64,000 bases of DNA from Octopus sinensis (lineage: Eukaryota): the NCBI RefSeq assembly GCF_006345805.1, contig NC_043004.1:51088001-51152000 (forward strand), read 5' to 3'. This document shows positions 1,365 to 50,749 of this stretch, piece by piece. Below the pieces are notes generated by a model, which saw only the letters and a list, made by a program, of their open reading frames with translations, had not been told where the DNA came from and ran no database searches. The first letter of the stretch is position 1, and each line of letters starts with the position of its first letter. Both the position numbers and the translations under genes were made by a program.

Positions 1365-2255
1365 CATATTTGACTTTTGCTTTATATTTGTACAAGTTGG
1401 CTCCAAGTCTCACCCAGAGACCTCAAGAGACAACAGGTTGGAAGTTCACGTTGTTGTTATACCTTGTGTGCCATATATTTGGTTGTTTTTCTGTTTTACT
1501 AGTGGATCTCTAAAAAAAAATGTTTGTTTTAAACCTTGAGATTACATAGAAAGTACTTTGCGTAGGGTATGAGTAGTTCCCATGAGCACTACCTTTTGAA
1601 TTTCTGCCATTTTTGGGTTTCCTGTTAGGTAGCAATCAGCCCCTTTTGCTATCATTCCCAGGGCACCTATGACAACAGGTATTGTTTTAGTCTTCAGGTT
1701 CCACAGTTTGCTGATTTCTATTTCAAGATCTTTATATTTGCTCAGTTTTTGGTAGGTCTTGACAGATACGTTTATATCGATTGGGACAGTCATATCAATG
1801 AGGAGGCATGTTCTTTGTTTGAAGTCTTTCAATATGGTGTCTGGCCTATTTGCATCTATCTTTCTGTCAGTTTGAATGGTGAAGTTCCAGAGGAGTGAGA
1901 TGTGGTCATTTTCAAGCACTGGGGGTGGTTTGTGTTCCCACCAGTTTTTTTCATGGGGAAAATCCAGGTTTTTGCAGATTACCCAGTGAATATATTGTGC
2001 AGTTCTATCATGCCTGTTGAGATACTCTGTAGGCGCTAGAAGACTGCACTTGGAGACCACATGATCAATGGTTTCATTTTGTTGCTGACATACACGACAT
2101 GTTGGGCTACTGCCGATCTTTAATATGTTGGCCTTGTAGTTTCTTGTTGGTAGGCATTGATCTTGAGCTGCTATGATAAACCCTTCTGTTTCAGATTTTT
2201 AGCCAGAGGTCATTAGCCATTGATGGGTCAGGTCTTTGTCAACATCTGCATTTAG

Positions 2256-12275: not shown

Positions 12276-15200
12276 TGTTACACATTCATATCTATGTGTA
12301 TACGTGGGTATTGAACTCATGCTCGGTACCACAGTATGTGTATATCACAGAGTGATATCTTGCCTGTCAACCTTTACAAAAAGATGTTCCCAGAACACAT
12401 GACACTAGAGGATAAAGTCAAAGAAGGAATCCTCACACCAAGTGATGTAATCCTCACTGCGTACGGAGGTACCAGGATTCCACAACTGAGCAAAACAACA
12501 ATCACAGGGACACACAAAGGAAAAATAATCAAGTGTTCTTTTTATGTCACAAGAACAGAAGGACCAGCATTTCTTGGACTCAATACCTGCAAAAAGCTAA
12601 ATATTGTGTCAATCAATGGTGAAGTGAAGGCAGCTCCGAGCAGGATTGACCACCAATCACAAACAAAGAAGAACTGATAAGCATGTATCCTGAATGCTTT
12701 GATGATACAGTTGGGTGCTTTGTGAAATGTCGATACCATATAAAAGTCGACCCCAATATCAAACCAATTGGTCACCCACCTCGCCGCGTCCCTCTAGAAC
12801 TAAAAGAGAAGCTGAAGGCAGAGTTGGACAGAATGGAAAAAATAGAAATAATCACCAAAGTGACACGACCAACAGACTGGGTGAATTCAATTGTAATCAA
12901 GGAAAAACCCAATGGTACCCTACGGATATGCCTCGACCCAAGGGACCTGAACAAGGCATTAAAAAGAGAGTACCATCCAATTCCAACCCTTGAAGAAATC
13001 ACACCATCATTGGCTGGATCCAAATTATTCAGCAAACTGGATGCCAGTAATGGGTACTGGAATGTAAAGATAGACAAAGAGTCACCCATGCTCACTACCT
13101 TCAACACACCATTTGGCAGATATCGATTCAATCGACTCCCATTTGCATTGAAGGTGAGCCAAGATGTTTTCCAGCGCCAAATAGATGAGACCTACCAAGG
13201 CTGCAAGGGAGCAGTTGGGATAGCAGATGACATCCAAGTGCATGGCAAGGATGAAACCACACATGACTTCAATTTACATGAAGCTATGGAGAAAACCTGA
13301 CAAGCAGGCATCAAACTCAATGCAGACAAGTGTGTGATAAAAGCAAAGGAGTGCAAATTCTTTGGAATTATATACTCTGCAGAGGGAGTTAAACCAGACC
13401 CCGCTAAAGTGGAAGCCATCAGAGACATCAAAGAACCCAAAGACAAGAAGGAACTCAGGAGCTTCCTGGGACTCATCCACTACATGGGAGCCTTCATACC
13501 CAAGCTGGCCGATCACACTGCAAATCTCCAAGAACTAAACAAAGATGACGTAGAGTTTGATTGGTGTGCTTCACACACACAGGTTTTCAAAGCAATCAAA
13601 AAGCTCATCAGTAAGGAGACAACTCTGCAATACTATGACAGACGCAAACCAGTAATACACTCCAAGTCGATGCTTCTATGAGAGGAGTTGGCGCAGCACT
13701 GATACAGGAAGGTAAACCCATTGCATATGCCTCGAAAGCTCTCTCACCCACAGAGACAAGGTACGCAAATATTGAAAGGGAACTCCTGGCAGTAGTATAT
13801 GGATGTGAAAAGTTCCATACATACCTGTATGGCAGACATTTCAATATTGAAACAGACCATCGCCCGCTAGAACAAATACATAGAAAAAACCTCACGAAAG
13901 CACCAGCCAGACTGAAAAGATTACTGTTAAGGCTTCAAACATACGACTATGACATCAGGTACAAGCCAGGAAAAGACCTGATATTGGCGGATGCTCTTTC
14001 CAGACTATCCTCACATGATAAACAGGAGATGGAAGGACTAAGCATAAAGGTTCACCACATTGTAAATGTAACAACCACAAAGCTAGCAGAAATCAAAGAG
14101 GAGACCAGCAAAGATGAAGAACTGCTGCTCCTTACTCAGATGGTGATTCAGGGGTGGCCAAAACAATCACTACAGTGGCTCGAGGACTTCCAGCAGAGCA
14201 AGGAATACCAGAGCAGATCATATGTGACAATGGAACCCAGTTCCCATCGCAAGAATTCAAAAAGCTAGTCGATGAGTATGGGTTCAATATTACAACCTCA
14301 TCTCCACACTACCCCAAAGGTCATGGGTTTATAGAAAGATAGGTGCAGACAGTGAAGCGAACACTAGTCAAATGCCGAGAGACTAAGGAAGACCCACACC
14401 TGGCACTTCTGTCCCTACTGAGAGCTGACATGAAATCCCCAGCAGAATTGCTGAATGGCAGGAAGTACAAAACTACCCTGCCAACTAAGATCCAACCTCC
14501 TATTGACCAGGAAGGGACGGGGGCAAAGCTAGCAGCCACTCAAGAACAATCACAGAAATATTACAACAAACATGCACAATATTTACCTGAGATACTTGGA
14601 GGACAACATGTGCATACTCAAGATCCATAACTAAAACATGGATCCCAGCACGGGTTGTCAGTAGAGCTAAAACTCCAAGATCGTATATAATAGAAACGGA
14701 ATCTGGTAGGCAGCTGAGACGCAACAGGGCCCACATCCGCCCAACACCAAAGCTGTCGAGGACAACGTGTACAACACCTGCTGCATCAGTGACAACACCC
14801 ACAGAATCATCACCCCAACGGGCACCAACCACCCATCAGTAGCCCAATAACACACCTCAGACACCGGTGCGAAGCACAAGATCCACCAGATGAAGATCGA
14901 ACATTCTGCCACCGGTTCGACACCGTTAAAGAAAAAAAAAAAGAAAATGAAAAGATAAATAACTAATTCTACTAGATTACAAAGCAGAGGCAGAATAATC
15001 TCACGGTTTCTGCTGCAGGATTGCCACCTCGCGCTGACAATCCATTAGAGTAAGGGAGACTACTTGTATTTGTCTTCACTGCCAAAAGACCCCTTTATTT
15101 TTTTCAAGAAGAAGGGATGTTACACATTCATATCTATGTGTATACGTAGGTATACGTGTGTAGAATACATCCCCACTTTTGGCACTATTTTGTTAGTAAA

Positions 15201-18089: not shown

Positions 18090-19381
18090 TGACTGTCAAG
18101 GAATGTGTGTTGGTAATATGCTAAAGAACAAACACAAATCGGTGACGGTGGAGAATGTCATTCTGCTCTGATGTCTGTGACAGTCTGCAAATTGCTGTTC
18201 TTTATGGCTGTATATATAGGCTGTGCTAAAGAAAAGTTCAAGAATGTCTATAGAAGCTATCATATGAACAACAGCCGCTGATTGAACAGTTACTCAGTTG
18301 TTTAAATTATAACTTGTAATTCATAACCACATATCCATTGTACCTGGGCTGTGATTTCTCAATGCAGAAAAGTACTGGTTTGACTTGGAAAGCCTCATAT
18401 AATGACATTGAGCTTTTTATTATTAAAATTCATAAGAGAAATAATTTAGAACAATGTTGATTTGCTTATTAAGATAGTCATTTACTTTTTTATGTGCTGA
18501 AAAGGTGATATGGATATGGTCCTGGTGATGTTATTATTTTCTGGTTTCAAACGTGTCATGATAAAAAGCATCAAGAAATATGAAGACACCAATTAAAAAT
18601 GACGGCCACATTTATTTCTCCTTTAATAGAAGATACAGCGAATGAGTACAACATGAATAATTCTATTAATAAAAATACCTTGGTTCCTCATGTAGCTTGT
18701 ATATGATGATGTACGTAGGAAGAACACAAAATATGGCGTCAAAGATCTCTGTTGACAATCCTCTCCTCACTGAGAATGCACAGTGGAATAAAACTTGCTC
18801 TCTGCCAAAGATCCGAATTCCATCATGCAAAACCCACCTCACTGGCTGTGCTCAAAAGAAATTCCTTATTTATATATATCTGTAGGTTCAAAACAGACCA
18901 CACTTTTGCTGGTCTTGCAAGTGATTTGATTGGATAGCTTAAAGCATTAATCAGCACAAATGTGTAAGGTCATGTGACCACTTGTAGAAAACAGGAAAAA
19001 TAGAGACAGCCAAATAATAAAGATAGCATCCGGGTACGATTTAATGTGAATAATATATTGTTATGACATAAAATTAACGTCATCACCATGTCTGGTGAGT
19101 ACACAAGTTATTTGTTTATTACAGTGAAATGCTTTCTGTGGACTCATGGGCCATTGTGTACATTAGTAATTTAGTTTCGTTCCTGTACAGCCAGGGAGAA
19201 AGATATAGTAAAAAAGATATAGGCAGCTAGGGACAATAAAAGTTCTACTTTCACGCATCTGCTCTTTGGCTAAAGGCCAAAATGACTGAAAGCAAGAATG
19301 ATATGTATACTTGACTTGTATGTAACAGGATGTGCTCTTGGTTGGCACTGAATTTATCAAAGAGATGAACTTAGTATTTGA
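18090..19381 (+). repeat. Copy 1 of a 1.29-kb direct duplication
   Basis: Matches 20244-21541; only five small indels seen. Confidence 0.95.
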
Positions 19382-19393
19382 CTGTTTATTCAT

Positions 19394-20243: not shown

Positions 20244-21541
20244 TGACTGTCAAGGAATGTGTGTTGGTAATATGCTAAAGAACAAACACAAATCGGTGAC
20301 GGTGGAGAATGTCATTCTGCTCTGATGTCTGTGACAGTCTGCAAATTGCTGTTCTTTATGGCTGTATATATAGGCTGTGCTAAAGAAAAGTTCAAGAATG
20401 TCTATAGAAGCTATCATATGAACAACAGCCGCTGATTGAACAGTTACTCAGTTGTTTAAATTATAACTTGTAATTCATAACCACATATCCATTGTACCTG
20501 GGCTGTGATTTCTCAATGCAGAAAAGTACTGGTTTGACTTGGAAAGCCTCATATAATGACATTGAGCTTTTTATTATTAAAATTCATAAGAGAAATAATT
20601 TAGAACAATGTTGATTTGCTTATTAAGATAGTCATTTACTTTTTTATGTGCTGAAAAGGTGATATGGATATGGTCCTGGTGATGTTATTATTTTCTGGTT
20701 TCAAACGTGTCATGATAAAAAGCATCAAGAAATATGAAGACACCAATTAAAAATGACGGCCACATTTATTTCTCCTTTAATAGAAGATACAGCGAATGAG
20801 TACAACATGAATAATTCTATTAATAAAAATACCTTGGTTCCTCATGTAGCTTTGTATATGATGATGTACGTAGGAAGAACACAAAATATGGCGTCAAAGA
20901 TCTCTGTTGACAATCCTCTCCTCACTGAGAATGCACAGTGGAATAAAACTTGCTCTCTGCCAAAGATCCGAATTCCATCATGCAAAACCCACCTCACTGG
21001 CTGTGCTCAAAAGAAATTCCTTATTTATATATATATCTGTAGGTTCAAAACAGACCACACTTTTGCTGGTCTTGCAAGTGATTTGATTGGATAGCTTAAA
21101 GCATTCAATCAGCACAAATGTGTAAGGTCATGTGACCACTTGTAGAAAACAGGAAAAATAGAGACAGCCAAATAATAAAGATAGCATCCGGGTACGATTT
21201 AATGTGAATAATAATATTGTTATGACATAAAATTAACGTCATCACCATGTCATGGTGAGTACACAAGTTATTTGTTTATTACAGTGAAATGCTTTCTGTG
21301 GACTCATGGGCCATTGTGTACATTAGTAATTTAGTTTCGTTCCTGTACAGCCAGGGAGAAAGATATAGTAAAAAAGATATAGGCAGCTAGGGACAATAAA
21401 AGTTCTACTTTCACGCATCTGCTCTTTGGCTAAAGGCCAAAATGACTGAAAGCAAGAATGATATGTATACTTGACTTGTATGTAACAGGATGTGCTCTTG
21501 GTTGGCACTGAATTTATCAAAGAGATGAACTTAGTATTTGA
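20244..21541 (+). repeat. Copy 2 of the 1.29-kb direct duplication
   Basis: Matches 18090-19381. Confidence 0.95.
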
Positions 21542-22617
21542 TTGAAAAAATATTTACTTTGTGTAAAAAAATGATTTATTTCGTGTTTTATTTACTTTGC
21601 TAGGTAGTCGTTGTAGGATCGACTGGTCACGACTCGCTTATGCGGAAGCGCGAATGCGTGCACCAGGACCACTCTTCTTAGATAGTATCCAAAAATTATA
21701 ATTATAATTATTGATTATCATTATTTAAAATGATACAATTTTTGTTTTCCTTTACTTCTATATAAATTCTGATCCACACCTAAATTCTAACCTGAGTCTT
21801 TCAAATGGAAAATGTTTGTTACTTTTACGTTTTATAAATTCCCGAATTGATTCGCCAGAAGTGCTAAAGGGAGGTAACTACAAGCAGACTCCGGTCGATC
21901 ATTGAGTTTAAAACATCAGTTTGACTTACATCGAAATTAATTAAATTTGTCTATAAATCGACGGTGTGGCATGTAAGGACAGTCAGCTGATAAATGCGTG
22001 TTTGCAGTAGTCGAAGATATACTACGTTTAATAAAAAGGGCGGCCAAAATCCATACAACTCCACTGTTACAAATTATTTATCAGGGTCGTAATTTTTTTT
22101 CCTTCCGTATTCTCAAATGGCTTCTTTGCTCTCCCTTATCACACGACCAGGTAGTGTGTGTGAGAGAGATTTTTACCTGCAATTAAGATGTGCTGTTGCT
22201 GTTCCCAAACAAATATTTTTAAGAAGTGTACAACTACAAAGGAAAATTCTTAATATATGAAAAAAGGCAAAAAATCGAAATAATTTATTTTTACAATGAA
22301 GTCCCATAAAATAGACTAAATGGAAGCAAACAAACTAGTTTTTTGATAGTACTGAAAAAAAGTGCCTTGCTCAAGAGCATAACTCACAGCCTGGTCCAGG
22401 AATCAAACTCACAACCTCACAATTGTAAGCTCAATGCTCCAACCACTGAGCCATGTACCTTCACTATGAAGCCATGTAAAATTGTACCAATAATAAATAT
22501 GTATATAAACTGTCACCAAGTCTTGTCATAACTACTCGCTACAGTCTTGTTACATCCACATTAAATAAACACAGGAGTTAAATGAAGGATGGCAATAAAC
22601 ATACATCGTTAACTTCA

Positions 22618-34240: not shown

Positions 34241-34619
34241 AAGAAATTTGTAACAGAGAACCAAGGGTGGTCTCAGGCTGGATGGCATCAAAACGGTTAA
34301 AGCCAAATGGTTTAGGCTAGCACTCCATCTGATCTGATCAATGGAACAGCCCACTCATGAAATTAACGTGTAAGTGGCCAAGATATGCATCTCTTAATGT
34401 AGTTCTGAGGGAAAGTCAGCATGACACAGGATGTGACAAAATTGGCCCTTTCGAATTACACGTACGGCTCATTCTTGCTGTGTGAGTGAACTAGAGCAAC
34501 ATGAAATAAATTGTCTTGCTCAAAGACATAATGCGCAGCCAAATATTGAACTCACAACCTTATGATCAGGAGAAAAATTACTTGACCACTAAGCCATGCA
34601 ACTTCACAATATAGTTTAA

Positions 34620-34840
34620 CCCTTTCGTTACCAATCCAGCTGAAACCAGCTCTGGCTCTGAGTACAAATGTCTTGTTTTCCTAAGTTTTTAATTAAAATC
34701 TTCCACCAAACCTGAGTCACAATTTATATGCCTAACACTAGCTGAATGATAACTAAGTTATTTTAGTAAACTCTTTGTTATATTTAAAATCAATTGAAAG
34801 AAACACAGAGCATCTCAACAGAAATATGGTAACAAAAGGG
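34620..34840. mobile_element. piggyBac-type MITE copy 1
   Basis: TTAA|ccctttcgttacc...ggtaacaaaaggg|tttaa. Confidence 0.8.
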
Positions 34841-34873
34841 TTTAAATATATATAACAGAGAAACAATTCTTAA

Positions 34874-35091
34874 CCCTTTTGATACCAATCCGGCTAAAAC
34901 CGGCTCTGGCTCTGAGTACAAATGCCTTGTTTTCCTCAGTTTTTAATTAAAATCTACCAAACCTTAGTCACAATTTATGTTCCTAACATTAGTTGAATGA
35001 TAACTAAGTTATTTTAAGTAAATTCTTTGTTATATTAAAATTAATTGAAAGAAACACAGAGCATCTCAAAATAAATACAGTAACGAAAGGG
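34874..35091. mobile_element. piggyBac-type MITE copy 2 (tandem)
   Basis: TTAA|cccttttgatacc...gtaacgaaaggg|TTAA; interior homologous to copy 1. Confidence 0.85.
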
Positions 35092-35132
35092 TTAACTATA
35101 AACAAATAACAAAACATTTGAAGAAGTCTTAC

Positions 35133-35264
35133 TCGAAAAATTAAAGCCAAATGGTTTGATATGTCATTAGCATTCCATGGTGGTTTTGTTGTGGCCATTT
35201 CAATCATTACACAGCCAACACTCCACACATCACAACCTCGTCCATAGCTCTCCCCTCGGAGTAC
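35133..35264 (-). CDS. MAP3K1: MAP3K1 exon 11 in window (132 bp; [44 protein letters not shown])
   Basis: attccatcag acceptor, gtaaga donor; matches MEKK1 [18 protein letters not shown]...SNHLALIFK. Confidence 0.98.
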
Positions 35265-41758: not shown

Positions 41759-41921
41759 CTGGCATCCATTCAACAAACATATTGAAGTGGCAGCCTTGCC
41801 GTGTGGCACCCATGATCCGTACAACATTGGGATGATTCAGTGCAGCTATCATGTGAATCTCCTCCGTGACATCTTGGATCACCTTCTCCTGCTCTTCTTC
41901 CGTGTTCCGACAGAAGGAAAT
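41759..41921 (-). CDS. MAP3K1: MAP3K1 exon 8 in window (163 bp; ISFCRNTEEEQEKVIQDVTEEIHMIAALNHPNVVRIMGATRQGCHFNMFVEWMP)
   Basis: atcatttcag acceptor, gttagt donor; alphaC helix and hinge; phase 0 to 1. Confidence 0.97.
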
Positions 41922-43033
41922 CTGAAATGATAAAGAAGGAGAAATAATCATCATTAAACCAATTGGTTAAGTAAATATCTAAACAAAGCATGTTAACGAA
42001 TCTCTTATCATTCAGATGCCAGTGCCCCATAAAAAGCACTATCCAAAACGTGATCAAGGCCAGGCCCACCTGACTGGCCCCTGTCCCAGTGGCAGTTAAA
42101 AAGCACCCACTACACTCTCGGAGTGGTTGGCATTAGGAAGAGCATCCAGCTGTAGAAACCTTGCCAGATCAGATTGGAGCCTGGTGTGGCCTCCTGGCTT
42201 TCTAGACCTCAGTCAAACCATCCAACCCATGCCACTATGGAAAACGGATGTTAAACGATGATGAAGCTGGCTTCGCAACTACATGGTTCCAAGTTCAGTT
42301 CCATTACACTGCACTTCCAGCAAGTGTTGTCTGCTACAGCCTTGGGCTGACAAAAGCCCCATGAGGGGATTTGAGAGACACACTAAAAAGAACACGTTAT
42401 TCATTCACTCATTCATGCATGCATACTTACATACATGAGTATACACACGTTCTCTTTTTTTCTTCTTTTTTTCTGTCATTTTTTTTTTACCTGTCACTAG
42501 ACTATGACCATGCTGGAGCACCACCTTGAATTTTTAGTTGAATGAATCAACTCCAGGACCTATTTTTTAAAGCCTGGTAATTATTTCATCAGACTCTTTT
42601 CTTAAACCGCTAAATTATGAGGATGCAAACACACCACACTGGCTGTCAAGGGGGGACAAACACAGACATGAAGTCACACACACACACACACATATATGAG
42701 GGGCTTCTTCTCGCTTCCGTCTACTAAATCTACTCACAAGGTTTTGGTCAGCCAAAGGCTATAGTAGAAGACACTAACCCAAGGTGCCATGCAGTGGGAC
42801 TGAACCTGGAACCATGCAATTGGGAAGCAAGCCTATTACCATGTATATGTATATATATATATAATTAATAAAAACAGCTGTTTGCAACATTACACCATAA
42901 AGAAAAATTATAGTCATCATCTAAACTTAACTAACACCTACATTGCTTGAAATAGGAGTTAAAATGCTACAATGCTGTTACAAAGCACGTGACATACTCT
43001 GATAGGGGCGGCAATCACACCGAACGAAGAGTT

Positions 43034-43085
43034 CCTTAAACTGACCGGCCAGTTTCGGCTATTTCCATAGCCATCTTCAGTAAGG
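43034..43085 (-). ncRNA. Type I hammerhead ribozyme fold, intronic, sense to MAP3K1
   Basis: CCUUA-CUGAAGA-U-GGCUAU(GGAA)AUAGCC-GAAA-CUGG(CCGG)UCAG-UU|UAAGG: complete core and three paired stems. Confidence 0.8.
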
Positions 43086-43679
43086 CCGGCTCATTTGGCT
43101 GATTCCAGGCAACCTCGCCTATCAGAGTATATATATATTCACCATAAAAATCTATGGATGATTTAGCAGATCGCTAATGTGTATACAAAAATTAATAAAA
43201 GCAGCTGTTTGAAACATTATACCATAAAGGAAAATTATAGTCGTCAACTATACTTGACTAAGGGCATGAATAACACACATATATGCCGCCCTCATATATA
43301 TATATATATAAAGAATAATCAGCCGAAATTGTGAGGATAATCTGGTGCTTGACTGAAGAAAGAAAACTTCGAATGACCCGTTCTTGTTTTCATTGGAATG
43401 TAGAGAACAAAAATAAATTCACATTTTGAACCTGAGAAAAGTCTTGCACAGTTTTACTGCTCCACTTAGATATAGTTTTTGTAATGTACATGTTAGCTGG
43501 TTGATTTCATTCTCTGAAAATTTTTTAAATACCCAGAAAAATATTGGTGTTGCTTTGGCATGTGATCTACAACTTACAGGGTGATTGCTGTAAGTTATTG
43601 TTTAGTTTACTTTTCAATTTCTAAAGGAAAAAAACCATGACATTTTGATTCGGTTAACTGATGCCGCTTATCGTAAAAG

Positions 43680-43955
43680 AAAGATTGCAATGGATTTTGT
43701 TATTTAAATCAGTATAATAGAATAGAACCATTTCCTGTTTGGATAGACTGATAAGTTTGGCAGCTGCAAGTTTAGAAAACATAAAGCTGGCAAGATTTCA
43801 CCGGTTTTCCCTTTTCTTTGGGGATCTTTCATTTCTCCACCACAAAGATGACATCGTGCAACATTTTCTTCATCATCTAAACGACCATTTTCTCATAAAA
43901 ACGCAACTGCCTTTGTCTCTTCACTGATCTTACTGTTAAAATCTTTAGCCAACAT
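43680..43955 (-). mobile_element. Merlin/IS1595-like transposase N-terminal remnant
   Basis: MLAKDFNSKISEETKAVAFL*ENGRL...ARCHLCGGEMK...then CQTYQSIQTGN after a frameshift; zinc-ribbon pattern. Confidence 0.5.
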
Positions 43956-44587
43956 CTTACAGGTTTTTAGTGGCACCAAAAAATCACTATATGCTTGTAG
44001 ATGCATATTGAAAAGGTTCATCTTCAACTAGATATTGATATTGAAGCAATTTCTTCCAGATCTACACAGATTGGAAGACATAGAATATATTTGTCTTGAA
44101 AACGTCACATTTGCTTTCGTCAGGCACATCACAAAAGGCAAATAAGAACTGTGACTATTGACATTATTGTCCAACGAATTCATTAGCATATTTTTGAAAT
44201 TTTAAAAATAAGTTTAAATAAATACGATGAAGCTTTTGATGCTGCTCTGGTGAAAATTCTGAGTAATTAGCAGATAATATTTTCAGGTGAAAAAAGTTAT
44301 TTTGGGCAATGTTTTGTATGTTTACACATTTTTGGATCCTCTTAAAAATATTCAACATACGTTCCAGATAAAATTCTTTTAGTTTAATAGGGTAGTCAAA
44401 CTTTACTGGGAAAAATAAATCAATATAATTCTTGTCAGTGTTCAAGATTTACAGATTGGATATTTCATTGGGGTCTGTCTGCTGTGTACGCTTTGGGAGA
44501 GTGGCAGGAGGACATTATAGGGAAGTTACACTGTCTGGAGATGTTACAAGAGGAGACAACTCTGTTTGAATTACCCAAACAATCTTA

Positions 44588-44790
44588 CAGTTCTTTAGTT
44601 CTCCACTACACACCTAATCCATCACCCACCTAACGATGTGTCTATATATCCTACCTACTGCTACAGGCAAACCTAACTCTTACCAGCATTGCTTCAAAGA
44701 GAAAGTGGAGTGGGAAGAAGCAGTATGGCCAAGTCTATTGAAGCATCAGCAAAGCAAATGCTTTCTCTCTCTCTCTCTCGATCTACTCCA
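44588..44790 (+). pseudogene. Inverted, decayed duplicate of MAP3K1 exon 6 with upstream intron flank and acceptor
   Basis: Aligns to 49707->49508; 50/61 identical over the exon start; shared intronic words cagttctttagtt and atccatcacccacct; deletion breaks the frame. Confidence 0.9.
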
Positions 44791-44965
44791 AGAGGAGACA
44801 ACTTCGTCTCTAAACGTCAATTATAACGTACAGGTCCAACACTAATACCTTTCCATACTATTGATTTTGCCAAACCGTTAAAATTACTTGAAATGAAATA
44901 CAAGTGCTTGCACATTAGTATAGTGTACTTGTTCATTAGTACAAACGATACAAGCTAATTAATAC

Positions 44966-45196
44966 TTATTTCTTTATTACCCACAAGGGGCTAAACACAG
45001 AGGGGACAAACAAGGACAGACAAACGGATTAAGTCGATTACATCGACCCCAGTGCGTAACTGGTACTTAATTTATCGACCCCGAAAGGATGAAAGGCAAA
45101 GTCGACCTCGGCGGAATTTGAACTCACAACGTAACGCAGACGAAATACCACTAAGCATTTCGCCCGGCGTGTTAACGTTTGTGCCAGATTGCCGCC
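44966..45196 (-). mobile_element. SINE family B with 16-bp TSD acaagctaattaatac
   Basis: TSD at 44950-44965 and 45197-45212; similar minus copies at 54032-54256 and 61441-61672. Confidence 0.9.
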
Positions 45197-45675
45197 ACAA
45201 GCTAATTAATACTGTACTGTGCAATGTTCTAGTCTGTGCAAGATACCAGTAAGCTAATATGGTAGCCACAAGAATTTGAGGTTCGTTCCTGGTCATGAAT
45301 TAGTGTGGATTATAAAAGGTTCTGGATCATCAATATCCAGAATGTCAGTGTTGTACCTGCAGTAATGAACCCTAGGGAGAGCTGAGCAGCAGAAAGTCTT
45401 CAGTGAAATAACTCCATACTCCTAATTCAAGTGTTTTGGCCCTTAACTCCTTATACTCTAAGGGAACTGGTTCATATCCAGGTCATGACTCCTGGATATC
45501 CTCTCTACTGTCACATATGGTGGTGCTATTTTCATTTTGACCTGCTACTTCCTCTAATAAGACATGAACTGACCCTGGAGCTAAACAATAAGTGTATAAC
45601 AATTGGATTCGATCCTGTGTTCTCCATATAGCAATTACATTTCAATCACATGCACAAGCCTAATTGGTATATAAA

Positions 45676-45910
45676 GGCGGTGAGCTGGCAGAAACGTTAG
45701 CATGCCGGGCGAAATGCTTAGCGGTATTTCGTCTGCTGTTACGTTCTGAGTTCAAATTCCACCGAGGTCGACTTTGCATTTCATCCTTTCGTGGTCGATT
45801 AAATAAGTACCAGTTACGCACTGGGGTCGATATAATCGACTTAATCCGTTTGCCTGTCCTTGTTTGTCCTCTCTGTGTTTAGCCCCTTGTGGGTAGTAAA
45901 GAAATAGGTA
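45676..45910 (+). mobile_element. SINE family B (ggcggtgagctggcagaa head, aaagaaata tail)
   Basis: Other plus-strand copies at about 10318-10535, 11580-11835, 60976-61180 (TSD agttagataa). Confidence 0.85.
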
Positions 45911-46234
45911 TACAATCACTGATTGCTGCTCATGTTATAGTTCAATGGCTCATCTACACATTCTGTGGACTCAGCATATAAACACAATCAAATTTGTTGC
46001 CAATTTCATAGAGTGTCAAGACATCTGAGCTGCCATAACCCTAACCCCATTATTGCCACCTTCGGACTGTTCCATTTTCCCGTTGGCATTCACTCTCCTC
46101 ATGACACTGCGAATATGGATTTGATGTGTAAAAATGAACCCGAATTTCTAACAAAGACTTTCTGCATGTGTCACATACATTGTTTCATTTGAATATTTAT
46201 TTGCTTGTAATAAATCTTCTCTATTAAATCATCA

Positions 46235-46600
46235 TCATTGTTTAACGTCCGCTTTCCATGCTAGCATGGGTTAGACGGTTCAACTGGGGTCTGGGAAGCC
46301 CGAAGGCTGCACCAGGCCAGTCAGATCTGGCAGTGTTTCTACAGCTGGATGCCCTTCCTAACGCCAACCATGAGTGTAGTGGGTGCTTTATATGTGCCAC
46401 CGACACAGGTGCCAGACGAGGCTGGCGAACGGCCACGCTTGGATGGTGTTTTTTACGTGCCACCGGCACGGAGGCCAGGGAAGGCTGGCACAGCTACGCT
46501 CAGATGGTGTTTGTTACGTGCCACCAGCACGGAGGCCAGTCGATGCAGTACTGGCTACGGCCACGTTTGGATGGTTTTCTTATGTGCCACCGGCACTGGT
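46235..46600 (-). mobile_element. GAT-tailed retroposon family D (gaagggcatccagctgtagaaa core)
   Basis: Other copies at about 11096-11300 (+), 39815-39975 (+), 42075-42263 (+), 24050-24270 (-), 39205-39640 (-), 51270-51705 (-), 62480-62700 (-). Confidence 0.8.
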
Positions 46601-46751
46601 ATCACAAAACTACAAATTCCATTGATGTTCATCGATTTTGATTTGATTCTTTGATTTTTGATTTTTAGATTATGTTCTAAACCATAAAGAGCTCTTCCAA
46701 CGTGTTACAAGTACAACTGAACACATAAACAAACATATATATGACACAAAC

Positions 46752-46891
46752 CTGTTTGACAGCCATTAAGGTCCCAGTCTTCACATCCCTTGCTTGGTAA
46801 CAACTGCTGAATGCTCCTGTCCCTAACAAGTTACTTCGTACCCAATGTACATTCTCTAAGTACAGAGGGCTGTTGTTGTTGTTGCTGTTGT

Positions 46892-46929
<38 letters not shown>

Positions 46930-46997
46930 CTGTTTGGCATAGAAAGCATGCTACTGTGGTTGAATGGACTTGCCAATGGGTGCATATCTGATTGACT
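46752..46997 (-). CDS. MAP3K1: MAP3K1 exon 7 in window (246 bp): poly-S/N tract, kinase Gly-rich loop and catalytic Lys ([26 protein letters not shown])
   Basis: tgtgttgcag acceptor, gtttgt donor, 82 codons; kinase subdomains I-II nearly identical to MEKK1. Confidence 0.97.
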
Positions 46998-47775
46998 CTG
47001 CAACACAAATCAACACAGGTACAGATGAGTAATGATTAAGTAGAGTAATGAGTGATGAGTAATGCAGAAGGTAAGTTAAATTTTTATTATAGGTGCCTTC
47101 TAGTCATATGTTTAAAAAAAAGTTTGCTTTCCAGCCACAAAATTGCAGGTTCACTTCCCACAGCATGGCACCTTGAACAAATGCATCCTGCTATGGATGG
47201 AAGCACTCCGTCGGTTACGACGACGCGGGTTCCGGTTGATCCAAATCAACAGAACAGCCTGCTCGTGAAATTAACGTGTAAGTGGCTGAGCACTCCACAG
47301 ACACGTGTACCCTTAACGTAGTTCTCGGGGATATTCAGCGTGACACAGAGAGTGACAAGGCCGGCGTTTTGAGATACAGGTACAACAGAAACAGGAAGTA
47401 AGAGTGAGAGAAAGTTGTGGTGAAAGAGTACAGCAGGGATCACCATCACCCCCTGCCGGAGCCTCGTGGAGCTTTAGGTGTTTTCGCTTAATAAACACTC
47501 ACAACGCCCGGTCTGGGAATCGAAACCGCGATCCTATGACCGCGAGTCTGCTGCCCTAACCACTGGGCCATTGCACCTCCACTGCATCCTGCTATAGTGC
47601 CAGGCTAACCAAAGCATTGTGAGTGGATTTCCTTAACAGAAGTAATGAAGGACATCCAATCGGAGAAACCATGCCTCGACAGACAGCTGGAGTCTGGACA
47701 GCTCTCTGCTAGCCAGCTTCATGTCAAACTGTCAAACCCATCCCAGCATGGAAAGCAGATGTCAAACAATGATAA

Positions 47776-47811
<36 letters not shown>

Positions 47812-48388
47812 AGAAACCCATTGTGTGTGTGTGTGCATTTCCTAGTCTTGGCATTGCATGATAGCTGTAAATGAATGTGACTGTCATACAAGCTGTACCA
47901 TTCATTTTTAAAACCCCTGCAAAAACGGAGAAATATGTTGCTGGGAAATAAATGAGGGGCTGCCAACAACCTGGAAGTGCAACCAGTCATAGAAATTCTT
48001 TCTCAGAAAAAAAAAAAAAAAAAACTCTGTCCAAGCCATACAAACATGGAAAGGTGGACACTAAAACCAATGTTGATGAGTGGAAGGATTTAATTAGTAT
48101 TGAACTCAAATTGTACAGGAGTCAAATTACGCCTACACTTCTTCAGAAACTTTGATTGATAAAAAGTAACATAGCAGTAATACACTCAAGTTTGATTTAG
48201 TCATCTATCATCTGTTTCATCACCAGTATCATCATCATCATCATCGCTTTAAGGTCCACGTTTCCATGCTTGCATGGCTCAGACGAAGTTTATTGAGGCA
48301 GGATCTTTCTACTGCTGGATTTCTTTCTTGTTATCAATCCTCACCTATTTCAATGTAAAGTAATATTTTATCCATGAGCAGACATGGT

Positions 48389-48690
48389 GGAGGCACATGG
48401 CCTAGTGGTTGGAGCAGCGAAATCACGGTCAAGGGATCGCAGGTTCGAATCTCAGACCAGGCGATGTGTGTGTTTATGAGTGAAACACCTAAGCTCCATG
48501 CGGCTCCGGCAGAAAATAATGGCGAAACTTCTGCTAACTCTTTCGCCACAACTTTCTCTCACTCTTTCATCCTGCATCTTGCAGCTCACCTGCGACGGAC
48601 CAGCGTCCCGTTCAGGTGGGGAATCCGATATGCCAAGGAAACAGGGAAAAACGGCCCTATGAACTAGGCATGGCTCGAGAAGGAACAAAC
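48389..48690 (+). mobile_element. tRNA-derived SINE family C with TSD catgagcaga
   Basis: A box tggcctagtgg, B box ggttcgaatc; other copies at about 29638-29885 (+), 59790-59960 (+), 47390-47582 (-), 59040-59215 (-), 62250-62473 (-). Confidence 0.85.
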
Positions 48691-49465
48691 ATGAGCAGAT
48701 ATGTTTTTGCAAAATATTTGAAATGATGGAGATTCATTTACAACCTTAAGTGATGCCAAGACAAAGAGACACAAACAGAAAAACACACACACATGCAATA
48801 GGCTTGTTTCAGTTTACTAAATCTACTCACAAACCTTTTGTTGACCTGGATCTATGGTAGAAGACGCTTGCTCAAGGTACTACACAGTGGAACTGAACCT
48901 GAAACCATGTGATTGAGAAGCAAAATTCTCAATCACACAGCCATGTCAGCATTTCTTTTAGAACAAATATATACTCTTTTACTTGTTTCAGTCATTTGAC
49001 TGAGGCCATGCAGGAGCACTACCTTTAGTCGAGCAAATCGACCCCAGGACTTATTCATTGTAAGCTCAGTACTTATTCTATTGGGCTCCTTTTTACCGAA
49101 CCGCTAAGTTACGGGGACGTAAACACATCAGCATCGGTTGTCAAGCGATGTTGGGGGGACAAACACAGACACACAAACTTATACACACACATGCATATAT
49201 GTATACATATATACGACGGGCTTCTTTCAGTTTCCGTCTACCAAATCCACTCACAAGGCTTTGGTCGGCCCGAAGCTATAGTAGAAGGCACTTGCCCAAG
49301 GTGCCACGCAGTGGGACTGAACCCGGAACCATGTGGCTCGTAAGCAAGCAACTTACCACACAGCCACTCCTACGCCTATATATAAAAATTTTTTAAAAAT
49401 CTAACTGAAGTAGAAGAGTAAATGGGATTTGTTTTTGATTAGACAAAATATTTATGCATTTTTAC

Positions 49466-49635
49466 CTCTGGTTGGATCCGAACTGTGATTACTTCTTCCC
49501 GATCTGATGGAGTCAATCCAGGCACCAAAGGACAAGGCTCTTGTTTTGCTGATGCCTCTAGAGCCTTGGCTAAAGCTACTGCTTCCTCCCGCTCCACCTC
49601 TTCTTTGCAGCAATACTGGTAGGAATCAGGCTTGC
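49466..49635 (-). CDS. MAP3K1: MAP3K1 exon 6 in window (170 bp; KPDSYQYCCKEEVEREEAVALAKALEASAKQEPCPLVPGL...VRIQPE)
   Basis: Matches MEKK1 [32 protein letters not shown]; ctacgtag acceptor, gtaaaa donor; phase 1 to 0. Confidence 0.95.
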
Positions 49636-50749
49636 CTACGTAGCAGATGGTAGAACACATAGTCAGGTGGGTGATGGATCAGTGAATCATGGCAAACTAA
49701 AGAACTGGGGCGGAGGAGGACAAAGAGAGTATAGGGTGCACATGATACATACATGCAAGGAATAGTGGATTGATGTGTGAGGAGAATATTCAGTAAATGT
49801 GGAAAAAGTATGGGTTTATGAGGAAGATATATTGGGTATTGTCCAGGGTGTGACTTTCAGCTACATCCAGAAGTGGGTCTCTGGTTCAAGAGGTCCAAGG
49901 TTTTAAGGAGTGTGGAACCATCATGTAGTCACTATTGTTTTCAGGTCTACTATGCCCTGGGGTAGTAGCACCTGTCAGGGTCCCAGCAATGGGTTACTTA
50001 GCATGTTATGGAAGAACCTCCAAGTACAAACCCAATAGGAAAAGAAAAGGCTAGAGGGGCCAGCCTTAAATCAAGGAGCAGAGTCTCTCACATGATTCAA
50101 TTGCCTCTTTAGAAGTAAATAAAGGTACTTTCTTGAGTTATATGGACTCATAAGGGCCGGTTTCCCGATTTCAAGGTGTATGTATTCTCCACCAGGATGA
50201 GACACCAGTCCATCACAGGATTACTCATTTTGGTCAGCTGAGTGGACTGAAGCAAAGTGAAATGCAGTGCCTTGCTCGAGAACACTATGCATTGCCTGGT
50301 CCAGGAATTGAAACCACAATCTTATGATCATGAGTCCGACACTATAACCTCTAAGCCACACACTTCCACAGTGACCTCTTTGACACCTTTACCAGCAACT
50401 CCAAGGTAGGCAGAACTCTTCAGCTCTGTAAGGCAATTCACCAAGGAGAAATCCACTCCAATGTAAAAACCTATAACTTGTTGGTCACTGCAGGCTGCCT
50501 TAGCTTGCTGAGATGCAGTGGTCAGACCTCCAAGTCTAAAGAGGTGGGGAGGTCAGATTGCACAGACTGAATTTCACTTTAGAACAACTAAGAACTGATA
50601 GGAAGAAAAACCCTGCAGTGTCAAAGATCAGTTTACATTGCTGCATGAGGGCAGGCTGCTCTTCTTTGTGATTTTTGGACGATGCTGCTATCATTTTGGA
50701 TATATGTAAGAGGTAAAAACAATGAATACAGGTGGATTTGTTTAAGAGA

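What the first reader, a model, noticed from the sequence alone, without database searches (positions are those of the whole stretch)
44588..44790. Inverted copy of exon 6 and its 3' splice site in a downstream intron: candidate editing-complementary sequence
Seen: the plus strand here matches 49707->49508 (intron flank, acceptor and exon 6), so in the pre-mRNA it is antisense to the exon, about 4.7 kb away and looping out exon 7. Over the first 61 nt there are 11 differences, and 7 become G-U wobbles in the pre-mRNA orientation (57/61 paired). One A-C mismatch falls on exonic A 49601 in an AAG context. Known: coleoid cephalopods recode mRNA extensively by ADAR, which needs exon-intron duplexes and favours A-C mismatches. 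Inference: this dead exon copy may direct A-to-I editing of codons such as UAC, CAG, UAU and AAA in the pre-kinase helix, or influence skipping or back-splicing of exon 7, which carries the Gly loop and catalytic Lys. The wobble bias is suggestive but the sample is small.
Basis: partly seen in the sequence, partly recalled or inferred. Interest (0 to 1): 0.8.

Follow-up and report, generated by a model that had tools for sequence, protein, structure and literature searches.

The report
Dead inverted exon copy in intron
A decayed, backwards partial copy of one exon of an octopus-type MAP3K1 kinase gene sits in a later intron of the same gene and could pair with the real exon in the unspliced RNA, but nothing here shows that it is maintained or used for RNA editing or splicing.

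Summary
Plus strand 44588-44790 is a diverged copy of minus strand 49707->49508, which is the last 72 nt of intron 5 plus the first 128 nt of exon 6 of a minus-strand MAP3K1/MEKK1-like gene. The copy lies in intron 7, 4,717 nt downstream in the pre-mRNA, with exon 7 (Gly loop, catalytic Lys) in the loop. It is dead: frameshifting indels, and its 3' third degraded into (CT)n. With 26 nt of filler it lies between perfect 15-nt direct repeats, as a templated insertion would. In silico the two arms form a ~170-bp imperfect duplex (-245 kcal/mol). That duplex persists when the whole 5.2-kb stretch is folded, and neither arm has local structure of its own. So if exon 6 is edited, this is the obvious partner. 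Evidence for selection is weak. The wobble excess is real (14:5), and transcription-linked mutation bias does not explain it (control 179:181). But P is about 0.03 on transitions only and 0.10-0.23 once transversions are counted, and the test was chosen post hoc. All three exonic A:C mismatches, including 49601, fall on synonymous third positions. Editing data and other octopod genomes could not be reached. Most likely it is a neutral inverted micro-duplication and at most an incidental ADAR substrate.

The parts
44588..44790 (+). Inverted pseudo-exon. Its plus strand is the sense copy of intron 5's 3' flank plus the 5' 128 nt of exon 6, so in the minus-strand pre-mRNA it reads antisense to exon 6. 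Sub-parts: 44588-44664 is the intron-flank copy (with an 8-nt insertion at 44641-44648); 44665-44757 is the exon copy (with a 4-nt frameshifting deletion); 44758-44790 has degraded into (CT)n.
49508..49707 (-). Source arm: the last 72 nt of intron 5 (49707-49636, including the polypyrimidine tract and acceptor AG at 49637-49636) plus the first 128 nt of exon 6 (49635-49508).
49466..49635 (-). Exon 6 of the MAP3K1/MEKK1-like gene (170 nt, phase 1 in, phase 0 out). It encodes ...KPDSYQYCCKEEVEREEAVALAKALEASAKQEPCPLVPGLTPSDREEVITVRIQPE. This helix is conserved in other lophotrochozoan MAP3K1 proteins and looks UIM-like by eye (Pfam gave no hit).
46752..46997 (-). Exon 7 (246 nt, so in-frame if skipped). 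It encodes a poly-Asn/Ser tract, the Gly loop GTGAFSS and the catalytic-Lys motif MAVKQ. It lies inside the loop closed by the two arms.
41759..41921 (-). Exon 8. It marks the 3' end of intron 7 (41922-46751), which holds the copy.
44547..44561 (+). Left copy of the perfect 15-nt direct repeat CAAGAGGAGACAACT that flanks the insertion (like a target-site duplication).
   Evidence: (D15)
44789..44803 (+). Right copy of the 15-nt direct repeat. Its first two bases (CA) overlap the end of the homology with exon 6.
44562..44587 (+). 26-nt filler between the left repeat and the start of the homology. It has no other match in the window.

Best explanation
The element is a dead, inverted, partial duplicate of the intron 5/exon 6 junction of a MAP3K1 (MEKK1)-like gene. 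About 200 bp of nearby unspliced genomic sequence, plus 26 nt of filler, was inserted in reverse orientation into intron 7 between 15-nt direct repeats. The most likely origin is a templated insertion made during break repair or replication template switching (inferred). Since then the copy has decayed roughly as neutral sequence does. Because it lies in the same transcription unit in antisense orientation, the nascent pre-mRNA can fold exon 6 onto it as a ~170-bp imperfect duplex. This is possible for as long as intron 7 is unspliced, and at least 2.7 kb must still be transcribed after the copy appears. In a coleoid nervous system that duplex is expected to be an incidental, promiscuous ADAR substrate, like the inverted SINE pairs in the same introns (inferred, not shown). 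There is no evidence that it is maintained for editing or splicing.
For: Homology and boundaries.

The source is the real exon. Its peptide is conserved in other MAP3K1 proteins, and the phase fits the exon 5 donor.

The copy is dead: 8-nt insertion, 2- and 4-nt deletions, and a (CT)n tail.

The copy includes intron sequence, so it came from DNA or unspliced RNA. It has no poly(A). It is flanked by a 15/15 direct repeat found only at these two sites in 64 kb (direct-repeat alignment 17 versus 8.4 +/- 1.4, 0/500 shuffles).

Duplex: -245.4 kcal/mol, ddG -142 versus -13.5 +/- 4.6 for a shuffled arm, 171 pairs, helices up to 20 bp. In the MFE of the whole 5,221-nt stretch, 158 of 200 source-arm nt still pair with the copy. 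Neither arm has local structure (z -0.47 and +0.17).

Neutrality:
- With the local neutral spectrum, the number of wobble-making changes is not unusual once all substitutions are counted (P = 0.10 and 0.23).
- Divergence of the exon part (19%) is no lower than that of the intron part (17%).
- The A:C mismatches are synonymous third positions.
- The pair is one of about 25 low-copy duplicate pairs in the window.
Against: Among transitions alone, wobble-making changes exceed mismatch-making ones 14:5 (18:8 over the full length). The mutational explanation I proposed, transcription-coupled strand asymmetry, is not supported: SINE copies in the same gene give 179:181, and 65 other inverted pairs give 564:534. 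This pair has the highest wobble fraction of 41 comparable pairs.

The two 15-mers are identical although the insert is 17-19% diverged. P is 0.06 to 0.002 depending on the assumed neutral divergence. This fits poorly with a single old event followed by uniform neutral decay.

No RNA data were available, so 'incidental editing' is itself unverified.
Confidence: 0.6

Rival explanations
1. The copy is a selected editing-complementary sequence. It is retained because it pairs with exon 6 and directs ADAR to recode specific codons of the conserved pre-kinase helix (for example K>R/E, Y>C, Q>R, E>G) in neural tissue.
For: The duplex is stable and is the only dsRNA partner of exon 6 in the window. 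Of the 35 exonic A in the arm, 31 are paired and 21 would recode if edited. The wobble excess among transitions is not explained by mutation bias. The kinetic window is plausible, because the copy lies mid-intron 7.
Against: The wobble test is post hoc and is not significant when transversions are included. The best-preserved block pairs with intron, not exon. The copy has indels and microsatellite decay. All exonic A:C mismatches are synonymous. Most recoding A have a 5' G or C and/or lack a 3' G; only 2 of the 9 A in a favourable (U/A)-A-G triplet would recode. No editing or conservation data exist.
Confidence: 0.12
2. The duplex acts on splicing. By looping out intron 6, exon 7 and part of intron 7, it promotes exon 7 skipping (246 nt, in-frame, giving a kinase-dead MEKK1) or back-splicing of exon 7. 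Alternatively it masks the exon 6 acceptor.
For: Exon 7 is 246 nt and phase 0/0. The duplex covers the polypyrimidine tract and AG of intron 5. In the 5.2-kb MFE it is the outermost helix enclosing exon 7.
Against: The upstream arm is mostly exon 6 itself rather than the intron next to exon 7. The intron 5 acceptor is transcribed about 4.9 kb before its partner, so it can be used first. A closer inverted SINE pair already flanks exon 7 (46234-46299 / 47708-47773, I4). There are no transcript data.
Confidence: 0.1
3. The long hairpin is a substrate for Dicer-type processing or nuclear dsRNA surveillance and lowers MAP3K1 output (endo-siRNA or hairpin RNA).
For: Only the existence of a ~170-bp intramolecular duplex.
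Against: The duplex is interrupted every 6-20 bp, and there are no small-RNA data. The same introns hold longer and more perfect SINE hairpins: 174 nt at 94% (I1) and 173 pairs.
Confidence: 0.03
4. The inverted copy is an assembly artefact (a chimeric or fold-back read).
For: Inverted duplications are a known artefact type (my own knowledge).
Against: Artefacts give near-identical arms. Here the arms are about 18% diverged, with indels, a microsatellite, 26 nt of filler and flanking direct repeats.
Confidence: 0.02

Closest known systems
Intronic editing-complementary sequences (ECS) of ADAR targets, e.g. GRIA2 Q/R and R/G sites and Drosophila Syt1 (background in PMC5705066)
   Same: An intronic segment in the same pre-mRNA is complementary to an exon and is predicted to form an imperfect duplex with G:U pairs, mismatches and bulges.
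   Different: Known ECSs are defined by demonstrated editing and by strong conservation, and they usually lie in the adjacent intron within a few hundred nt to about 1-2 kb. Here editing and conservation are both untested. The partner is 4.7 kb away, in a non-adjacent intron with a whole exon in the loop. The element is visibly a decaying copy of the exon rather than a trimmed, conserved pairing element.
Inverted repeat-element pairs (Alu in primates, SINEs in cephalopods) that give promiscuously edited dsRNA in introns and UTRs (PMC5705066, PMC9068888)
   Same: Two diverged (~80%) inverted copies a few kb apart in one transcript, about 170-200 bp long. The same introns contain several such SINE pairs.
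   Different: One arm here is a unique protein-coding exon rather than a repeat. Hyper-editing would therefore recode a protein instead of hitting non-coding sequence.
Templated insertions from break repair or MMBIR/template switching (e.g. PMC8421209, PMC11724301)
   Same: A short stretch of nearby sequence was copied in inverted orientation into a new site, with extra filler and a small flanking duplication.
   Different: The events documented in those papers are mostly shorter, somatic or experimental. Junction microhomology here is only 2 nt on one side, and the other junction is obscured by filler. The mechanism cannot be proven from one old, diverged locus.
Inverted intronic repeats that promote exon circularisation or looping-out (my own knowledge, no paper read here)
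   Same: The complementary arms bracket an internal exon (exon 7).
   Different: The upstream arm is the preceding exon plus its acceptor, not the intron immediately flanking the looped exon. No circular or skipped transcript is documented.

Membership tests
ADAR editing-complementary sequence (ECS) | Lies in the same primary transcript as the edited exon, in antisense orientation | tested here: met
   The copy is in intron 7 of the same minus-strand gene, and its plus strand equals the exon sense.
ADAR editing-complementary sequence (ECS) | Predicted to form a stable duplex with the exon in competition with other structures | tested here: met
   -245.4 kcal/mol, ddG -142 versus -13.5 +/- 4.6. 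158 of 200 nt still pair in the MFE of the 5.2-kb context. This is thermodynamics only, not kinetics.
ADAR editing-complementary sequence (ECS) | A-to-I editing is observed in the paired exon (RNA versus DNA A>G) | not testable with these tools
   No RNA data for this species. The cephalopod editing tables are not held or have no entry. No transcript-derived proteins of this gene are in the databases.
ADAR editing-complementary sequence (ECS) | Conservation or covariation of the element across species | not testable with these tools
   No cephalopod orthologue could be retrieved. The only relatives found share about 50% identity with the exon 6 peptide and are non-cephalopod (L001-L007).
ADAR editing-complementary sequence (ECS) | Within-sequence signature of selection for pairing (excess of pair-preserving changes) | tested here: inconclusive
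   G:U versus A:C is 14:5 (P = 0.03 on transitions only), but P = 0.10-0.23 with transversions. The pair ranks top of 41 control pairs, yet lies only 1.6 sd above their mean.
Templated insertion (break repair / template switching) | The inserted sequence is copied from a nearby genomic template, often inverted | tested here: met
   The template is 4.7 kb away on the opposite strand and includes intron sequence.
Templated insertion (break repair / template switching) | Microhomology at the junctions | tested here: inconclusive
   2-nt CA overlap at the right junction. The left junction is separated from the homology by 26 nt of unmatched filler.
LINE-mediated retrocopy (target-primed reverse transcription) | Target-site duplication | tested here: met
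   Perfect 15-nt direct repeats at 44547-44561 and 44789-44803, unique in the window.
LINE-mediated retrocopy (target-primed reverse transcription) | 3' poly(A) or element-specific tail next to the 3' duplication; a spliced mRNA as source | tested here: not met
   No A-run at either end in either orientation, and the copy contains 72 nt of intron. It is therefore not filed as a retrocopy.
MAP3K1 / MEKK1 (host gene) | Ser/Thr kinase domain most similar to MAP3K1, preceded by the conserved acidic/Ala-rich helix | tested here: met
   Best named hits are MAP3K1 (Bugula, Nymphon), with Pfam PF00069/PF07714 on the hits. The helix aligns with P0001 and P0004. A Pfam UIM model did not hit the short peptide.

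The most novel reading that the evidence does not exclude
The copy is a young editing-complementary sequence born by inverted self-copying of an exon into a non-adjacent downstream intron, and it is kept under selection for pairing, which would explain the wobble excess and perhaps the intact flanking repeats. On this reading it recodes the conserved ubiquitin-interacting-like helix of MEKK1 in neurons and/or tunes production of an exon-7-less, kinase-dead isoform. That would be a concrete example of how a cephalopod recoding site can originate in one mutational step.
Probability: 0.1. Interest if true: 0.6.

Novelty: new member of a known kind. Interest (0 to 1): 0.3.

Why it matters
If exon 6 is edited and the editing depends on this copy, the locus would show the birth of an exon-intron ADAR substrate by a single inverted micro-duplication. 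Its age and decay can be read directly from the sequence, and its geometry is unusual: a non-adjacent intron with a catalytic-core exon in the loop. This bears on the open question of where the many cephalopod recoding sites get their double-stranded partners. If exon 6 is not edited, the locus is an ordinary neutral pseudo-exon. It would still be a useful negative control, showing that a thermodynamically excellent 4.7-kb-range duplex is not sufficient for editing.

Tried and rejected
1. Transcription-associated mutational asymmetry as a neutral cause of the wobble excess: rejected. SINE copies inside the gene, compared with their family consensus, give coding-strand A>G + C>T = 179 against G>A + T>C = 181. 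The 65 other inverted pairs give 564:534. Intron skews are small (GC skew -0.005, TA skew +0.053).

2. A second, permuted partial copy of the exon 6 3' end to the left of the insert (44470-44587), or an extension of the copy beyond 44790: not supported (141/500 and 477/500 shuffles score as well).

3. LINE-type retrocopy: rejected. There is no poly(A), and intron sequence is included.

4. A transposon carrying the exon: no terminal inverted repeats seen by eye, and no other copy of the insert, filler or 15-mer in the window.

5. Cross-species conservation:
- The protein search with exons 6-9 found no cephalopod gene model.
- Exact-ORF look-ups of the exon 6 ORF and the copy ORF found nothing.
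- Homology searches with both ORFs found nothing.
- The metagenome scan returned only seven relatives at about 50% identity.

6. Published editing tables: the Cell 2017 and Nature 2015 cephalopod papers are not held. The supplements of PMC8382921 have no MAP3K1 entry. A full-text search for MAP3K1 + octopus + RNA editing gave nothing relevant.

7. Rfam: no family in the window. Pfam: no hit for the exon 6 peptide or the copy ORF.

Full report
**1. What is there**

The gene on the minus strand is a MAP3K1/MEKK1-like kinase. A query made of the peptides of four consecutive exons finds MAP3K1 of Bugula and Nymphon, and many kinase-domain fragments, as best hits.

Exon boundaries read directly from the sequence:
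- The large upstream exon ends CAA A|GTAAGT, phase 1.
- That phase fits the acceptor ...ACGTAG|GC AAG CCT... at 49636|49635.
- Exon 6 is 49635..49466 and ends CCA GAG|GTAAAA.
- Exon 7 is 46997..46752. It is 246 nt, phase 0/0, and carries a poly-Asn/Ser tract, the Gly loop GTGAFSS and MAVKQ.
- Exon 8 starts at 41921.

The exon 6 peptide (…EEAVALAKALEASAKQEP.P.VPGLTP…EEVI…IQPE) is conserved in other lophotrochozoan MAP3K1 proteins (P0001, P0004; L001-L007). Exon 6 is therefore the functional original. The helix looks like a ubiquitin-interacting motif to me, but Pfam gave no hit on the short peptide, so this is a lead only.

**2.

Plus strand 44588-44790 aligns with minus strand 49707->49508. 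The score is 85 against 12.3 +/- 1.5 for shuffles, and E = 9e-31 by sensitive blastn.

The source segment is the last 72 nt of intron 5 plus the first 128 nt of exon 6. Identity is 58/70 for the intron part and 74/91 for the exon part down to 49541. The last 33 columns of the copy are largely replaced by a (CT)n run.

The copy carries an 8-nt insertion (44641-44648), a 1-nt insertion, and 2-nt and 4-nt deletions, so it cannot code.

It lies in intron 7, 1,961 nt after the exon 7 donor and 2,666 nt before exon 8. The loop between the arms is 4,717 nt and contains exon 7.

The pair is unique in the window, and no other exon of the gene has a copy. Roughly 18% divergence plus indels rules out an assembly artefact.

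**3. Origin**

The copy includes intron sequence and has no poly(A), so it is not a processed retrocopy.

Together with 26 nt of filler that matches nothing else in the window, it sits between two perfect copies of CAAGAGGAGACAACT (44547-44561 and 44789-44803). These are the only two occurrences of that 15-mer in 64 kb. The direct-repeat alignment scores 17 against 8.4 +/- 1.4, with 0/500 shuffles as good.

This is the layout expected for a templated insertion of nearby sequence at a staggered break or after a replication template switch (class described in PMC8421209 and PMC11724301). That assignment is an inference.

One point stays unexplained. The 15-mers are identical while the insert is 17-19% diverged. 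P is 0.06 to 0.002 depending on the assumed neutral divergence.

A suspected second, permuted fragment of exon 6 to the left of the insert is not statistically supported.

**4. Can it pair?**

In pre-mRNA orientation the two arms co-fold at -245.4 kcal/mol. The ddG relative to the separate arms is -142, against -13.5 +/- 4.6 for a shuffled arm. There are 171 intermolecular pairs (82 A-U, 70 G-C, 19 G-U), with uninterrupted helices of 20, 15, 14, 14, 14, 13 and 13 bp.

When the whole 5,221-nt stretch 49760->44540 is folded, 158 of the 200 source-arm nucleotides still pair with the copy, even though several strong SINE hairpins lie nested inside.

Neither arm has notable local structure (z = -0.47 and +0.17). 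The copy is therefore the only substantial double-stranded partner that exon 6 has in this window.

Kinetically, pairing needs only that intron 7 is still present. After the copy is made, another 2.7 kb must be transcribed before intron 7 can be removed. Prior splicing of intron 6 would shorten the loop to about 2.2 kb. These last points are inference.

**5. Is it maintained?**

Transitions give G:U versus A:C at 14:5 in the well-aligned part and 18:8 overall.

I first suspected transcription-coupled mutational asymmetry, because wobble-making changes are coding-strand A>G and C>T. The local controls reject this:
- SINE copies inside the gene, compared with their family consensus, give 179 wobble-making against 181 mismatch-making transitions.
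- The 65 other inverted pairs in the transcript give 564:534.

The excess is therefore real, but small:
- P = 0.03 on transitions only.
- P = 0.10 (well-aligned part) and 0.23 (full length) when transversions, which all break pairs, are included.
- Among 41 control pairs with at least 15 transitions, the mean wobble fraction is 0.53 +/- 0.13 and others reach 0.70. This pair, at 0.74, is the top but lies only 1.6 sd out.
- The test was also suggested by the data.

Further points argue against maintenance:
- The exon part is no better preserved than the intron part.
- The longest well-preserved block (44614-44641, 89%) pairs with intron.
- The 3' third has become a microsatellite.

**6. What editing would do**

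Of the 35 exonic A in the arm, 31 are paired and 21 would recode if edited. Examples are K>E/R, D>G, Y>C at 49620 and 49614, Q>R at 49617, and several E>G.

The three exonic A opposite C all fall on third codon positions and would be synonymous: 49601 (GAA), 49571 (TTA) and 49544 (AAA). They are most simply read as ordinary synonymous or neutral differences.

**7. Verdict**

This is a real, old, decaying inverted micro-duplication of an exon-intron junction. It gives the MAP3K1 pre-mRNA a long-range exon-intron duplex.

The most likely status is neutral, with at most incidental, promiscuous ADAR editing (confidence 0.6). A selected ECS (0.12) or a splicing or back-splicing role for exon 7 (0.10) is not excluded. 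Both can be tested directly with RNA-seq and with other octopod genomes, neither of which could be reached here.

In kind, it belongs with known exon-intron and inverted-repeat ADAR substrates. The unusual aspects are that the antisense arm is recognisably a copy of the exon itself, and that it lies in a non-adjacent intron.

Noticed in passing
window 44547-44561 and 44789-44803: The two 15-nt direct repeats flanking the insert are 100% identical, although the insert they flank is 17-19% diverged from its source (P 0.06-0.002 under uniform neutral decay). The 16 nt upstream of each repeat are only 9/16 identical. This remains unexplained.
   Followed up: partly
window 44681-44725 (read on the minus strand): Antisense to the purine-rich exon and its internal CCAG, the copy presents a long pyrimidine tract, then AG, then CUG|GUAAGAG within intron 7. 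These are cryptic acceptor-like and donor-like signals created by the inversion.
   Followed up: no
window 47385-47585 / 48386-48582; 44962-45135 / 45738-45911; 47126-47194 / 49278-49345: Inverted SINE-type repeat pairs inside introns 6 and 7 form long hairpins in the 5.2-kb fold (173, 72 and 60 pairs; one pair is 94% complementary over 174 nt). They are stronger and closer dsRNA substrates than the exon 6 duplex.
   Followed up: partly
window 46234-46299 / 47708-47773: A 66-nt, 76% complementary inverted SINE pair directly brackets exon 7, with one arm in intron 7 and one in intron 6. It is a closer candidate than the exon 6 copy for looping out or circularising exon 7.
   Followed up: no
window 18090-19384 and 20244-21544: Two 1.3-kb direct repeats, 99.5% identical and separated by 860 nt, lie outside the part of the gene examined. 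This is either an LTR-like pair of a small non-autonomous element or a very recent tandem duplication.
   Followed up: no
window 12336-14268 (+) and 1542-2060 (-): Broken reading frames with retroelement pol-like sequence (reverse transcriptase / RNase H type) lie in the first, unexamined part of the window (coordinates below 30,272). They look like decayed endogenous retrotransposon fragments.
   Followed up: no
window 34616-34850 and 34870-35100: A tandem direct duplication of about 235 nt (89% identity) lies in the intron just downstream of the exon at about 35130-35228. It shows that small local duplications are not rare in this gene.
   Followed up: no
window 46869-46934: Exon 7 begins with a coding (AAC/AGC)n-type microsatellite that gives a poly-Asn/Ser tract immediately before the kinase Gly loop.
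   Followed up: no
L001-L007 (metagenome contigs Ga0056115_1001742 etc.): Seven metagenome contigs encode a 49-55% identical relative of the exon 6 peptide. They are presumably host animal DNA in host-associated metagenomes. This confirms that the exon 6 helix is conserved outside cephalopods.
   Followed up: no
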